The position numbers and the translations under genes are program-made. This document shows, piece by piece, positions 2,919-57,500 of a DNA stretch of 64,000 bases; positions within the stretch are counted from its first letter, which is position 1; every line of letters begins with the position of its first letter. This DNA comes from Octopus bimaculoides (Eukaryota), in the NCBI RefSeq assembly GCF_001194135.2, contig NC_068988.1, forward strand, positions 95,785,201 to 95,849,200. The letters run 5' to 3'. A model generated the notes under the pieces. That model ran no database searches. It was not told the origin of the DNA and saw nothing but the letters and a program-made list of their open reading frames with translations.

Positions 2919-3445
2919 CTAGCGATGCCATTTCCCAGCCGGCATGTTATGGCTTTCAACCCATTTTTGGTCTTCTCGCTTCAGCCATATATAGAAGCTG
3001 GTTTTGTCGACTGCCTCCAGCATCCTCCTTATTACTTTTCTTAGCTCTGAGCTTGCAAATGCAAACCTTCTTTTAAATAACGTTGCCATTTTCCTTTCAA
3101 TGAAACCTCTGGCCCCCACTGCCAAGTGGATATACTCGACAGTCCATCCCTGTTCTCTGCACTCTTCGATTAATTTTTCGTACCTCTTCTCCTTCCGTTG
3201 CTCTGCATTAACGATGTTCTCTTCCCATGGCACTGACAGCTCTAGCAAAATTCCAATTCTCTGTTCTGTGTTCCATAGGATTAAGCCCGATCTTTTTGTC
3301 GTTTTTATGAGTGGAAATATTAACAGTCTTTCCAAATCCGTGGCCATCTCCCAGTATCCCTTCCATCTGTCGTCTCTCTCGTATATTTTATTTGAACGCC
3401 TGGCCTTATGTCCTTTCCCTCCTTCGATGAACTGACTGATTTAAC
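2919..3445 (-). mobile_element. HERO/NeSL-type non-LTR retrotransposon 3' fragment (restriction-like endonuclease domain)
   Basis: Translates QFIEGGK...YWEMATDLERLLIFP...TTKRSGLILW...LLELSVPWEE...RKEKRYEKL...AVGARGF...SFYIWLKR. This matches the RLE C-terminus pattern W.MAVDL...RPDIVLW...ELTVPWE...KY...EVG.RGF...WLW.KR. The PD motif is mutated. 2400-2918 may be its 3' UTR. Confidence 0.8.
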
Positions 3446-8887: not shown

Positions 8888-9637
8888 GTAGTGAAATATT
8901 TGATGTGGCTTTATCGTTATATTTTGGCTAAATTGTTGGATGTTGACGGTTTCGTAACGTAAATGGCGTCGAATCAGTCAGTCTCTGTAAATACAATGTA
9001 ATGGAAAAGTAACGAAGGAAGGAAAGGAAAAGAAGTTCATGTTCATGATATCATAATTATTTTTTTAAAATTTTATTATTTTACTGATGTGATTTGTAGT
9101 TTTGTTTTTTGCTGAATTTTTGGTTTCGGTATTGGTTGGTTTTCGTCTGTTTTCAGTTCTGCGATTCTTCAGACAAAATGATTTTCGCCTAAAAGAAATA
9201 ATAAACGAAAGCAAAGAAAATTAACGATCAATTAATTATATCTGTTATTAATTTAACAATTAAATAATTTAACTAAAACTAGTTTGACGCAAATATTTTT
9301 GTCATTTTAGTCGTTGTTGTTGTTAAATACCATGTCAGCTCTAATGAAGCAGATATGATAAAAAGACACTCCAGCCATGATCATCCTGTTTTATGCTTTT
9401 CGTTCGACACATTATATTTTAGGTTCTGGGTTCTGGGATTTGATTTGAAGTAGGTTTAGATGATAGTTTTTATTAGGCTGAGACCACGTAGAAGCCCCCT
9501 CATTAGCATTTTAGCTTAATTAGCTGCTCTAATTAATAAGTGCTGAGAGAAAGAATAGGATAATAGGTATGCACACGAATAATCATTAAGCAACATTAAT
9601 TAAAATGTTACAATGAATTAATTAACCAGAAAGATTC

Positions 9638-14216: not shown

Positions 14217-14413
14217 TTAATTCATTACCAGTCTCTTAATTACGGGTGAAAAATCGTTCTGTTTCACTGCTCGTTCGTAAGTCTTTTCTAGGGGAAGAAC
14301 TGTGTCGTCATCAATTTCACTTCGTATGGCCCGTTGATCTAATCCTCTCGAAAGGATTTTCATCAACTGTTCGTCACGGTTTGACACATCCATCGAACTT
14401 CTTTTACCATTTC
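14217..14413 (-). CDS. GGNG: GGNG/EP precursor, coding exon 3 (GN-GKR amidation/cleavage site + C-terminal associated peptide)
   Basis: Acceptor atttcttttctatttcag|GA AAT GGT AAA AGA. Open to TAA at 14219-14217. The three exons sum to 64+39+197=300 nt (99 aa + stop). The last three residues are uncertain because of a possible donor CTG|gtaatg at 14229. Confidence 0.85.
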
Positions 14414-18554: not shown

Positions 18555-19680
<1,126 letters not shown>

Positions 19681-28082: not shown

Positions 28083-28844
28083 TGTATGTATGCATGTTTG
28101 TATGTATGTATGTATGTATGTATGTATGTATGTATGTATTATGTATGTATGTATGTATGTTTGTATGTATGTATGTATGTTTGTTGAGAGGAGACAAAAA
28201 CATACGTCAATTAAGGAATGATATACTGTTTCATGTTTGTTCGAAAATGCTGCTGTATTGTCAGATAAGTGACAGTATAGTTTGATACTGTTACAAGATG
28301 GGTTTCTCTTCCGCACGTCATTAGCAAACAGAGAGACAGCAAAATAAATGACAGAAAACAAAATAATTTGTCAACTCACTAATCTACATTAAGGAATTGA
28401 CGTATTCACTACTCCTGTATGAATACGTCTCTACATCAAGATATAAATACTAACACAATCAGGCACATACGTGCACACACAGCTGTATACGTATGCATGA
28501 ATCTATGTGTGTATGTATATGATCTAAGAGGTCACATTGCGGTCATTCCCATCATAAGTTCTTGCAGGATATGGCTACATTCGTTAAGGTCTTACGATCG
28601 AAACAGCTGTAAAGTATCTCCTTAAATAATAAAAGAATAGAAAACGTCTATATTCGTATCATGTTTAAAAGAAGTCTACTTAATTTCCTGGGATGTTGTA
28701 TCTCTGATAACATAGTCCGTTGTTCCTGTCGATAAATCGTGTAGTTGGATCCAGTGGAAGGATCTAGCGGCGCTGGTGTATACAATCATGTTATTCAACG
28801 TAGCAACAGCCCAGTCTTTCCTGTATAAGTTTGTGCTAGACCAG

Positions 28845-36512: not shown

Positions 36513-36551
36513 CTCCGAGACATGCGTGCATATTATGTCTGTTGCATTTTG
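36513..36551 (-). CDS. GGNG: GGNG/EP precursor, 39-nt coding exon 2 (mature peptide core (A)KCNRHNMHACLG(G))
   Basis: Acceptor tttttttttttctcatttcag| and donor GGAG|gtaagt. Reads CA AAA TGC AAC AGA CAT AAT ATG CAC GCA TGT CTC GGA G. C...HACLGGN-amide is the EP/GGNG signature. Confidence 0.92.
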
Positions 36552-55779: not shown

Positions 55780-55859
<80 letters not shown>

Positions 55860-55888: not shown

Positions 55889-55952
55889 CTGCATTTGCTA
55901 TTGATAAAAGAATTACAGCAGAAACGAGAAATAGACTGAGCCGAAGAGACAT
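55889..55952 (-). CDS. GGNG: GGNG/excitatory peptide (EP/CCHamide family) precursor, coding exon 1 (signal peptide MSLRLSLFLVSAVILLSIANA + 1 nt)
   Basis: ATG at 55952-55950. 21 codons form a basic N-region, hydrophobic core and A-N-A cleavage motif. Ends GCA G|gtaagt (consensus donor, phase 1), in frame with exon 2. Confidence 0.88.
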
Positions 55953-55974: not shown

Positions 55975-56010
55975 AAATGAAGATTTTCCGAAATCTACGG
56001 AATATTTATA
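55975..56010 (-). promoter_or_regulatory. Putative core promoter of the GGNG gene: TATA box + initiator
   Basis: TATAAATA at 56010-56003 (minus) and TCATTT initiator-like motif at 55980-55975 with the A at 55978, 32 nt from the TATA start and 26 nt before the ATG. Confidence 0.55.
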
Positions 56011-57500
56011 GAGCGATGCAAATTCTCAATCCTTGGTTGCGATTCGATTTGGCTTCTTTATAATCTTTCACAAAAGTTTTGTGTCGCTCACACACACACA
56101 CACACACACACACGTACACACACACACACGCACACACACGTACACACGTACACTCACACATACACCTATAATTAATGACGGGAGCGCACACTCATGCGCA
56201 CTCGCGCAACCCGCCCTCACTGCGTTAACGTTTCCTCCTCTCCACCCATTTCGGATAATTTATTGCTCGTGTTTAATATTGTAACCGAGTACGGGCTTAA
56301 AATAAAGCGTGGGTCGCTTCGTAATCTAATAAATAAAGACCGTTACCAATATCTCCTTGCTTTTTATGTATAATCACTGTGTGTGTGTGTAGGGGAGGGC
56401 TTACCTGTGAATGAGTGTGTGTGTTAAGTAAATACTATATGCATCTGACACACACACACACACACACAGACACGCACACACATATATGTATATATTCATA
56501 TGCATGTGTTTACGTATGCGTGTGCGCGTTTGTCGACGTCCCTCTGTGTTTGCCCATGCGCGTGCGCAAGTGTGCGTGCATTTGTGCGTGTGTGCGTCAT
56601 GTCCGTACGCATGTGTGCGTACGTGTTACGCGCGTGCCCGACACGTGTATGTGAATGCCTCAGTTGTGTCTGTCTGTCTGTCTGCATTGACGCGTTGAAT
56701 AGATCCTTCCTCTTTCTCCCCCCCCCTCGTTCCTCCTCCCTCCCTCCTTCTCTTCTCTCTCTCTCGCGCTGTATATGTGTTTGTGTATGTGTGTGTCTAT
56801 GTATGTATAAAACGTTTGAGCGTAGAGTATGTATGTGTNNNNNNNNNNNNNNNNNNNNNNNNNNNNNNNNNNNNNNNNNNNNNNNNNNNNNNNNNNNNNN
56901 NNNNNNNNNNNNNNNNNNNNNNNNNNNNNNNNNNNNNNNNNNNNNNNNNNNNNNNNNNNNNNNNNNNNNNNNNNNNNNNNNNNNNNNNNNNNNNNNNNNN
57001 NNNNNNNNNNNNNNNNNNNNNNNNNNNNNNNNNNNNNNNNNNNNNNNNNNNNNNNNNNNNNNNNNNNNNNNNNNNNNNNNNNNNNNNNNNNNNNNNNNNN
57101 NNNNNNNNNNNNNNNNNNNNNNNNNNNNNNNNNNNNNNNNNNNNNNNNNNNNNNNNNNNNNNNNNNNNNNNNNNNNNNNNNNNNNNNNNNNNNNNNNNNN
57201 NNNNNNNNNNNNNNNNNNNNNNNNNNNNNNNNNNNNNNNNNNNNNNNNNNNNNNNNNNNNNNNNNNNNNNNNNNNNNNNNNNNNNNNNNNNNNNNNNNNN
57301 NNNNNNNNNNNNNNNNNNNNNNNNNNNNNNNNNNNNNNNNNNNNNNNNNNNNNNNNNNNNNNNNNNNNNNNNNNNNNNNNNNNNNNNNNNNNNNNNNNNN
57401 NNNNNNNNNNNNNNNNNNNNNNNNNNNNNNNNNNNNNNNNNNNNNNNNNNNNNNNNNNNNNNNNNNNNNNNNNNNNNNNNNNNNNNNNNNNNNNNNNNNN

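What the first reader, a model, noticed from the sequence alone, without database searches (positions are those of the whole stretch)
36513..36551. Atypical mature peptide: no Trp and a shorter disulfide ring (C-x7-C)
Predicted product AKCNRHNMHACLGGN-NH2 keeps the AKC start and HACLGGN-amide end. It replaces the usual ..G.WAIH motif with NRHNMH, and its ring has 7 residues between the cysteines. As I recall them, the leech and gastropod EPs have 8 and insect CCHamides about 6. Loss of the conserved aromatic residue suggests a lineage-specific ligand with altered receptor pharmacology or a co-evolved receptor (inference).
Basis: partly seen in the sequence, partly recalled or inferred. Interest (0 to 1): 0.7.

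Follow-up and report, generated by a model that had tools for sequence, protein, structure and literature searches.

The report
Octopus excitatory-peptide gene, tryptophan-less ligand
The 39-base stretch is a real micro-exon of the octopus version of a well-known invertebrate gut/brain neuropeptide gene (excitatory peptide/GGNG/CCHamide). Its predicted hormone lacks the aromatic residue found in every other family member I could inspect, a modest but genuine octopus-lineage peculiarity.

Summary
Confirmed. Window 36551..36513 (minus strand) is a 39-nt, phase-1/phase-1 micro-exon with canonical splice sites. It is exon 2 of a 4-exon, ~47-kb gene whose spliced product is identical to RefSeq XP_014768932.1, an 'uncharacterized protein' of Octopus bimaculoides. 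The precursor is signal peptide | AKCNRHNMHACLGGN | GKR | spacer, the architecture of trochozoan excitatory peptide (EP/GGNG/CCHamide) precursors. The intron inside the second Gly codon of GGNG sits at the same place and phase as in oyster and pygmy squid. The ring has 7 residues and no Trp/Phe/Tyr.

This is not a sequencing error. O. vulgaris, O. sinensis and Argonauta hians have the same 39-nt exon: AKCSRHNLHACLGGN in the two Octopus species and VKCTKKNLHVCLGGN in Argonauta.

Among roughly 100 EP/CCHamide sequences inspected, all others keep an aromatic residue three positions before the His. Short rings are not unique: squids have VKCKWYDHICLGGN (ring 6), and a brachiopod and an annelid have ring 7. 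So the loss of the aromatic residue was seen only in octopods, but the shorter ring was not.

The original genome model (Ocbimv22005111) missed this exon, which is why published comparative sets lack the octopus ring. Altered pharmacology or receptor co-evolution remains untested. Interest is moderate.

The parts
56003..56010 (-). TATAAATA box about 50-60 nt upstream of the start codon (putative core promoter)
   Evidence: Sequence read. Its function is inferred only from position.
55889..55952 (-). Exon 1 coding part: ATG plus a 21-residue signal peptide MSLRLSLFLVSAVILLSIANA, plus the first base (G) of the Ala22 codon. Donor G|gtaagt.
   Evidence: Exact match of the spliced product to XP_014768932.1.
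36513..36551 (-). Exon 2, the finding. A 39-nt micro-exon, phase 1 at both ends, encoding (A)KCNRHNMHACLG(G). This is almost the whole mature peptide, including both Cys. Acceptor tttcag|, donor |gtaagt.
   Evidence: The exon and its splice sites are conserved in O. vulgaris (L001 30996..) and Argonauta hians (L002 32369..).
14229..14413 (-). Exon 3. It completes Gly35, then N36, the amidation donor G37, the dibasic cleavage site K38-R39, and the spacer SSMDV...VIKRL. Donor CTG|gtaatg.
9153..9188 (-). Exon 4 coding part: AKIILSEESQN plus the TGA stop. Acceptor ttttag|.
   Evidence: The C-terminal motif KRLAK(I/L)IL..E..Q is conserved in squid orthologues.
9072..9077 (-). AATAAA, a possible polyadenylation signal about 75 nt after the stop codon
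   Evidence: Sequence read. Inference only.

Best explanation
The feature is exon 2 of the Octopus bimaculoides orthologue of the trochozoan excitatory peptide (EP = GGNG peptide = CCHamide-type) neuropeptide gene.

Predicted processing of the 107-aa preprohormone, inferred from the sequence and from the established processing route of this family:
1. The signal peptide is cut after Ala21 (A-N-A|A).
2. A prohormone convertase cuts at K38-R39.
3. The basic residues are trimmed.
4. Gly37 is converted to a C-terminal amide.
5. Cys24 and Cys32 form a disulfide.

The product is cyclic AKCNRHNMHACLGGN-NH2. It most likely signals through the octopus EP/CCHamide-type (GRP/NMB/endothelin-receptor-related) GPCR, as in annelids, nemerteans and Aplysia.

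In the octopod lineage the ring lost one residue, the Gly of the usual C-x-G-x-W. The otherwise universal aromatic residue became His (Octopus) or Lys (Argonauta). The C-terminal half, [ML]-H-[AV]-C-L-G-G-N-amide, stayed fixed.

Shown here: gene structure, orthology, conservation among octopods, and uniqueness of the aromatic loss within the sequences surveyed. Inferred: processing, disulfide, amidation, the receptor, and any change in pharmacology.
For: Gene model and identity:
- Canonical splice sites at all exons, and a spliced ORF identical to XP_014768932.1.
- Orthologues: O. vulgaris and O. sinensis at 95-96% identity with AKCSRHNLHACLGGN. Argonauta hians at E 2e-17 with VKCTKKNLHVCLGGN.
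- The 39-nt exon and its flanking TTTCAG/GTAAGTTG are conserved in three genomes.

Family assignment:
- In an alignment with 9 molluscan, annelid and brachiopod EP precursors, K23, C24, C32 and G34-R39 are invariant. H30 and L51 are nearly invariant.
- The layout is the same throughout: signal peptide, then peptide, then GKR.
- A profile built from this alignment retrieves annotated and unannotated EP precursors of bivalves, gastropods, chitons, Lingula and the leech LEP.
- Unspliced oyster ORFs (P0025, P0026) break at ...CFGG|intron and intron|(G)NGKRS. An intron-retaining Idiosepius transcript (...HICLGERERV) breaks at the same place. So the phase-1 intron in the second Gly codon is shared.
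- Squid precursors (D. pealeii EST JK324610.1, Idiosepius notoides) are 42-45% identical over the full length, including ...SP.IKRLAK.IL..E.Q..

Receptor:
- An EP/CCHa-type receptor candidate exists in O. bimaculoides (XP_014782347.1) and groups with molluscan EP/CCHa receptors.
- EP receptors are validated in Platynereis, Lineus and Aplysia (PMC12969411).
Against: - No peptide-level or transcript-level data for octopus were available to me. Cleavage, amidation and the disulfide are inferred.
- The residue thought to be a core part of the family's pharmacophore is missing.
- The N-terminal half of the ring varies among octopods (N/S/T, R/K, H/K, M/L). This could mean relaxed constraint rather than a tuned ligand.
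- Two of the five O. bimaculoides/O. vulgaris differences fall in the 15-residue mature peptide.
- No cephalopod EP receptor has been deorphanised.
Confidence: 0.8

Rival explanations
1. Decaying ligand. The EP system is under relaxed selection in octopods. The peptide is on its way to loss or is no longer the functional ligand of the EP/CCHa receptor.
For: The otherwise universal aromatic residue is lost, and its position is not even conserved (His in Octopus, Lys in Argonauta). The mature peptide carries 2 of the 5 O. bimaculoides/O. vulgaris substitutions and 6 of 15 differences to Argonauta. In other phyla the mature peptide is the most conserved part of the precursor.
Against: The ORF, signal peptide, both Cys, His30, CLGGNGKR and all splice sites are intact in four species spanning the Octopus-Argonauta split. 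The substitutions are conservative (N/S/T, R/K, M/L, A/V). A receptor candidate is retained.
Confidence: 0.1
2. Neofunctionalised paralogue. Octopods keep a canonical Trp-containing EP gene elsewhere, and this gene is a diverged duplicate. Some gastropods have two EP precursors.
For: Two precursors exist in Reishia, Charonia, Deroceras and chitons. My profile search is not exhaustive: it missed the Argonauta protein, which is known to be in the database (versus 41).
Against: The profile search returned only this cluster from the Octopus proteomes, with no canonical form. The full HMMER search found no second octopod relative. No alternative Trp-encoding exon exists in the window or in the O. 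vulgaris or Argonauta loci. The precursor is collinear with, and 42-45% identical to, the single squid precursor.
Confidence: 0.07
3. Assembly or annotation artefact. The odd ring results from sequencing errors or a wrongly chosen exon in a gappy draft assembly.
For: The window is 13.9% N with 23 gaps. The first gene model for this locus was indeed wrong.
Against: There is an exact match to the RefSeq protein on a 97.8-Mb scaffold. The same 39-nt exon is present in independent O. vulgaris and Argonauta assemblies. The O. sinensis protein agrees.
Confidence: 0.01
4. Secreted toxin or 'doppelganger' peptide recruited from the neuropeptide gene for use in venom rather than endogenous signalling.
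For: Octopods make venom peptides that mimic prey neuropeptides (bioRxiv 10.64898/2026.02.02.703354). Fast evolution of the mature region is typical of toxins.
Against: That study screened cephalopod salivary-gland secretomes with GGNG and CCHamide models. It reported mimics only of stanniocalcin, luqin, myosuppressin, tachykinin and neurotensin. The gene is single-copy and collinear with the squid neuropeptide precursor.
Confidence: 0.02

Closest known systems
Molluscan/annelid excitatory peptides (GGNG peptides): Aplysia apEP/CCHa KCHGRWAIHACFGGN-NH2, Reishia (Thais) TEP-1/2, scallop GKCRGRWSIHACLGGN-NH2, leech LEP, Platynereis EP
   Same: Precursor layout: signal peptide, a single peptide, GKR, then an acidic spacer with an L..(I/L)L motif. 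K-C start, two Cys, H-x-C, and C-x-G-G-N-amide end. The phase-1 intron in the second Gly codon is shared with oyster.
   Different: The ring has 7 residues rather than 8, because the Gly after the first ring residue is missing. The Trp is replaced by His or Lys, and the following Ala/Ser by Asn. The N-terminal half of the ring is variable among octopods.
Decapodiform cephalopod EP: VKCKWYDHICLGGN-NH2 (Doryteuthis pealeii EST JK324610.1; Idiosepius notoides transcript), listed in Thiel et al. 2021 Suppl. 26
   Same: Clear orthologue. The precursor is 42-45% identical over its full length. Shared features are the [AV]KC start, H-x-CLGGNGKRS, QL(L/M)KIL, and the SP.IKRLAK.IL..E.Q C-terminus, with the same intron position.
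   Different: Squids have a 6-residue ring and keep two aromatic residues (W-Y). Octopods have a 7-residue ring and none.
Arthropod/ecdysozoan CCHamides (e.g. Drosophila CCHa-1 SCLEYGHSCWGAH-NH2, CCHa-2 GCQAYGHVCYGGH-NH2)
   Same: Disulfide ring, His before the second Cys, Gly-rich amidated tail, the same receptor family, and a brain-gut peptide role.
   Different: 6-residue ring, an aromatic-Gly-His core, and a C-terminal His-amide rather than Asn-amide.
Other trochozoan EPs with a 7-residue ring: Novocrania anomala GKCRQWSSHHCWGGN, Dinophilus gyrociliatus GKCPVWALHACAGGN
   Same: The same ring length. MAFFT places the gap at the same place (the Gly position) as in octopods.
   Different: Both retain the Trp.

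Membership tests
EP / GGNG / CCHamide neuropeptide precursors | Precursor architecture: N-terminal signal peptide followed directly (0-2 residues) by a single peptide copy, then a Gly-Lys-Arg amidation/cleavage site | tested here: met
   MSLRLSLFLVSAVILLSIANA|AKC...GGN|GKR|S.... The layout is the same in all aligned family members.
EP / GGNG / CCHamide neuropeptide precursors | Two Cys residues in the mature peptide, able to form one intramolecular disulfide ring | tested here: met
   C24 and C32 are invariant columns in A1 and A3. Formation of the disulfide itself cannot be tested with these tools.
EP / GGNG / CCHamide neuropeptide precursors | Trochozoan C-terminal motif C-x-G-G-N-(amide), with His two residues before the second Cys | tested here: met
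   H30-A-C32-L-G-G-N36-G-K-R. G34 to R39 are invariant, and H30 is nearly invariant.
EP / GGNG / CCHamide neuropeptide precursors | Aromatic residue (W in most trochozoans, F/Y/W in ecdysozoans and rotifers) three residues before the His position | tested here: not met
   Octopus has His and Argonauta has Lys at that position. Every other sequence inspected has W/F/Y there. This is a conserved feature rather than a formal definition. It lowers 'typical member', not orthology.
EP / GGNG / CCHamide neuropeptide precursors | Ring of 8 residues (typical trochozoan) or 6 (ecdysozoan) | tested here: not met
   The ring has 7 residues. Ring length in the family ranges from 6 (squid, ecdysozoans, rotifers) through 7 (Novocrania, Dinophilus) and 8 to 9 (Gymnomenia, Wirenia). 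The feature is therefore not strictly defining.
EP / GGNG / CCHamide neuropeptide precursors | Shared gene structure: the peptide is encoded on a short exon ending with a phase-1 intron inside the second Gly codon of G-G-N-G | tested here: met
   Octopus: GGA G|gtaagt ... cag|GA AAT GGT. Oyster read-through ORFs P0026 (...CFGG|SWLK) and P0025 (...SLG|NGKRSW). Idiosepius intron-retained transcript ...HICLG|ERERV. The same structure is seen in O. vulgaris and Argonauta.
EP / GGNG / CCHamide neuropeptide precursors | Significant sequence similarity of the whole precursor to recognised members | tested here: met
   42-45% identity to squid EP precursors. It is retrieved together with EP precursors by a family profile at 107 bits. 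There is no Pfam model for the family.
EP / GGNG / CCHamide neuropeptide precursors | The ligand activates an EP/CCHamide-type (GRP/NMB/endothelin-receptor-related) GPCR | not testable with these tools
   Only the presence of a receptor candidate is known: XP_014782347.1 in O. bimaculoides, placed within the molluscan EP/CCHa receptor group of a published tree.
EP / GGNG / CCHamide neuropeptide precursors | The mature peptide is C-terminally amidated and detectable in nervous or gut tissue | not testable with these tools
   The Gly-Lys-Arg signal is present. No peptidomic data were accessible.

The most novel reading that the evidence does not exclude
Octopods have re-engineered the pharmacophore of an ancient bilaterian peptide system. 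After losing the aromatic ring residue that is otherwise universal from rotifers to insects, the octopod ligand binds mainly through its invariant [ML]-H-x-C-L-G-G-N-amide half. Its receptor would have co-evolved so that canonical EPs and the squid peptide no longer cross-activate it, or the ligand would have switched receptor. This would be a natural experiment in ligand-receptor co-evolution within coleoid cephalopods, comparing ring 6 with W-Y in squids against ring 7 without aromatics in octopods.
Probability: 0.3. Interest if true: 0.55.

Novelty: new variant of a known kind. Interest (0 to 1): 0.4.

Why it matters
EP/CCHamide is a conserved protostome brain-gut peptide system. It is related to vertebrate GRP/neuromedin-B/endothelin signalling and is linked to feeding, satiety and gut motility. 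No cephalopod member has been functionally studied. According to a 2026 preprint, only one cephalopod neuropeptidome survey exists.

The octopod ligand is the only family member I found without the aromatic ring residue. Its true sequence has been absent from published comparative sets because the first genome annotation skipped the 39-nt micro-exon.

This gives a ready-made, cheap test of which residues matter for receptor activation: three synthetic peptides against one or two receptors. It also gives a correct sequence for antibody, probe or mass-spectrometry work on octopus feeding and gut control. It is a useful correction and a modest evolutionary curiosity, not a new kind of system.

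Tried and rejected
- The Python sandbox was lost. Motif scans were then done with the DNA search, and divergence counts by hand.
- Pfam found no family for the precursor. No curated model exists.
- I looked for alternative or mutually exclusive peptide exons encoding a canonical W-A-I-H-A-C ring. There are none in the sequenced part of the window or in the O. vulgaris and Argonauta loci. The single + strand hit at 28774 is at chance level.
- P0005, a 795-aa repeat protein hit in the exhaustive HMMER search, is spurious. It is a low-complexity ...GKR repeat.
- The profile search did not list the Argonauta protein although it is in the database. I therefore do not treat the absence of other hits as proof.
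- Neither protein search found decapodiform sequences. They came instead from supplementary data of Thiel et al. 2021.
- I could not obtain the Sepia officinalis GGNG sequence (Zatylny-Gaudin 2016, not held).
- No paper in the library mentions the peptide string or the gene IDs.
- The bacterial promoter/terminator scan is irrelevant to a eukaryotic gene and was ignored.
- The venom-toxin idea was checked against the 2026 cephalopod venom preprint and found no support.

Full report
**Observation**

On the minus strand, window 36551..36513 reads CAAAATGCAACAGACATAATATGCACGCATGTCTCGGAG. It is preceded by a polypyrimidine tract and cag, and followed by gtaagt. In the only open frame it encodes (A)KCNRHNMHACLG(G), with a split codon at each end. 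A degenerate search for H-x-C-x-G-G plus a splice donor hits only this site in 64 kb, against 0.09 expected from shuffles.

**Gene model, all on the minus strand**

- Exon 1: ATG at 55952 through 55889. It encodes MSLRLSLFLVSAVILLSIANA plus one G, with donor G|gtaagt. A TATAAATA box lies at 56010..56003.
- Exon 2: 36551..36513, 39 nt.
- Exon 3: 14413..14229. It begins GA AAT GGT AAA AGA, which completes Gly35 and gives N-G-K-R, and it ends ...AAG AGA CTG|gtaatg.
- Exon 4: 9188..9153. It encodes AKIILSEESQN and the stop. An AATAAA follows about 75 nt downstream.
- The introns are about 19.3, 22.1 and 5.0 kb.

The concatenated CDS translates to a 107-aa protein. An exact-sequence look-up identifies it as XP_014768932.1, 'uncharacterized protein LOC106868263 [Octopus bimaculoides]'. 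The window is therefore O. bimaculoides, and the current RefSeq model agrees with mine.

**Not an error**

The 90%-identity cluster also holds O. vulgaris CAI9727000.1 and O. sinensis XP_029639638.1. Both have AKCSRHNLHACLGGNGKR.

An exhaustive HMMER scan of 1.84 billion representatives found one further true relative. It is Argonauta hians GAB1603730.1 (E 2e-17, 50% identity), with VKCTKKNLHVCLGGNGKR.

I fetched the O. vulgaris and A. hians loci and aligned the exon with its flanks. All three genomes have a 39-nt exon bounded by TTTCAG| and |GTAAGTTG, with no Trp codon.

**What it is**

I aligned the octopod proteins with scallop, oyster, whelk, triton, chiton, brachiopod and annelid EP/GGNG precursors taken from published supplements.

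- K23, C24, C32 and G34-G35-N36-G37-K38-R39 are invariant. H30 and L51 are nearly invariant.
- The layout is identical throughout: signal peptide, then one peptide, then GKR, then a spacer.
- A profile of this alignment retrieves EP precursors of many bivalves, gastropods, chitons, Lingula and the leech LEP.
- Gene structure agrees too. Unspliced oyster contig ORFs break at ...HMCFGG|SWLK and ...SLG|NGKRSW. An intron-retaining Idiosepius transcript breaks at ...HICLG|ERERV. The phase-1 intron inside the second Gly codon of GGNG is therefore shared with octopus.
- Squid precursors are 42-45% identical to the octopus protein over the full length. These are the Doryteuthis pealeii EST JK324610.1 and an Idiosepius notoides transcript. 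The similarity includes QL(L/M)KIL and the C-terminal ...SP.IKRLAK.IL..E.Q.

I conclude that this is the octopod orthologue of the EP/GGNG/CCHamide gene.

**How atypical is it?**

I inspected roughly a hundred EP/CCHamide sequences from Thiel et al. 2019 Suppl. 1, Thiel et al. 2021 Suppl. 26 and my own hits.

Ring length is not fixed in the family:

| Ring length | Taxa |
|---|---|
| 9 | solenogasters Gymnomenia, Wirenia |
| 8 | most trochozoans |
| 7 | Novocrania, Dinophilus, octopods |
| 6 | ecdysozoans, rotifers, Loxosoma, and squids (VKCKWYDHICLGGN) |

So the shorter ring is not novel. Both coleoid lineages have shortened rings.

By contrast, every non-octopod sequence has W, F or Y three residues before the His (or before its rare Q/M/N substitute). 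Octopus has His there and Argonauta has Lys.

Aligned from the conserved C-terminal side, the octopod ring lacks the Gly of C-x-G-x-W. It has W changed to H/K and A/S changed to N. It keeps [ML]-H-[AV]-C-L-G-G-N.

The N-terminal half of the ring also varies among octopods. Two of the five O. bimaculoides/O. vulgaris differences lie in the 15-residue peptide. This is unlike the near-invariance of the peptide in other phyla.

**Why it has been overlooked**

The EP cluster in the published query collection contains 'octopusBimaculoides.Ocbimv22005111'. Its sequence runs ...[14 protein letters not shown]|GNGKRSSMDV...VIKRLVMN.

- Its N-terminal part maps to a cryptic, phase-compatible exon in intron 2 of the window (18842..18695), preceded by translated CA-microsatellite.
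- Its end is a read-through of the exon 3 donor.
- That first-generation model therefore lacks exons 1, 2 and 4, so the octopus ring never entered those comparisons.
- No paper in the searchable library contains the peptide string or the gene identifiers.
From the two squid sequences I expect it to be the W-Y form, but that is inference.

**Mechanism**

Shown: a secretory signal with A-x-A before the peptide, two Cys, and a Gly-Lys-Arg amidation/cleavage site.

Inferred from the established biology of the family: signal peptidase, prohormone convertase, carboxypeptidase, amidation and disulfide formation give cyclic AKCNRHNMHACLGGN-NH2. This would act on an EP/CCHamide-type GPCR.

O. bimaculoides has such a receptor candidate (XP_014782347.1). 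In a published tree it groups with molluscan EP/CCHa receptors. Its branch length (0.36) is similar to Lottia's (0.36) and shorter than oyster's (0.56). This is weak evidence against dramatic receptor divergence.

EP receptors respond at 8-80 nM in Platynereis, Lineus and Aplysia, where the peptide modulates feeding and gut function or ciliary swimming. No cephalopod receptor has been tested.

**Rivals**

- Relaxed-constraint or decaying ligand. It is supported by the variable ring half. It is opposed by the intact ORF, splice sites and invariant C-terminal half across the Octopus-Argonauta split.
- Diverged paralogue with a canonical gene elsewhere. No second hit in Octopus proteomes and no alternative exon, but my searches are not exhaustive.
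- Artefact. Refuted by three genomes.
- Venom recruit. A 2026 screen of cephalopod salivary secretomes with GGNG/CCHa models reported none.

**Verdict**

The loss of the aromatic residue is a genuine feature that I found only in octopods. The 'shorter ring' is ordinary variation. The pharmacological interpretation is untested.

It is a new variant of a known kind, of moderate interest. Its main uses are as a corrected ligand sequence and as a clean structure-activity and co-evolution test case within coleoid cephalopods.

Noticed in passing
window 18695..18842 (minus strand), within intron 2: A cryptic exon (cag|AGGGCAGAA...ATTACTG|gtgatg, phase-compatible with exon 3) supplies the bogus N-terminus of the first-generation gene model Ocbimv22005111. 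That model is still reproduced in published neuropeptide query collections. It lacks the signal peptide, the peptide micro-exon and exon 4.
   Followed up: yes
window 9153..9188 plus 14229..14240 (minus strand); alignment A3: After a K-R site at the end of exon 3, the precursor ends in LAKIILSEESQN. This tail is strongly conserved in squids (LAKLILPDETQN, LAKLILPEESQT) and recognisable in Argonauta (LARETLNEDLQYY). It may be a second, coleoid-conserved processed peptide or a sorting motif.
   Followed up: partly
mature-peptide codons, window 36513..36551, versus L001 30996..31034: Between O. bimaculoides and O. vulgaris the 39-nt exon differs at 5 bases (2 amino-acid changes, N/S and M/L). This is about as much as the flanking intron. 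2 of the 5 protein differences fall in the 15-residue peptide, so the ligand is not the slowest-evolving part of the precursor, unlike in other phyla.
   Followed up: partly
proteins P0025, P0026, P0027 (Logan contigs, oyster-like) and Idiosepius 42226: Intron-retaining or unspliced ORFs from other molluscs reveal that the peptide lies on its own short exon and that the GG|NG intron is ancient. This is a handy way to read gene structure from transcript or contig ORFs.
   Followed up: partly
whole window; gaps listed: 13.9% of the window is N, in 23 gaps. Almost every gap is flanked by di-, tri- or tetranucleotide microsatellites such as (AT)n, (CA)n and (TATG)n. (AT)38 lies about 30 nt into intron 1 (55781..55856) and (CA)n lies just upstream of the TATA box (56089..56165). 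Unsequenced intron parts could in principle hide small exons.
   Followed up: no
window 2919..3347 (minus strand): A 142-aa ORF (MATDLERLL...LELSVPWEENIVNAEQRKEKRYEKLIEECREQGWTVEYIHLAVGARGF...) looks like real protein-coding sequence, possibly a fragment of a mobile element. It lies downstream of the gene. No Pfam family passed threshold.
   Followed up: partly
The alignment-based homologue search did not return the Argonauta hians protein, even though that sequence was a row of the query alignment and is in the database. Negative results from that tool should therefore not be read as absence.
   Followed up: no
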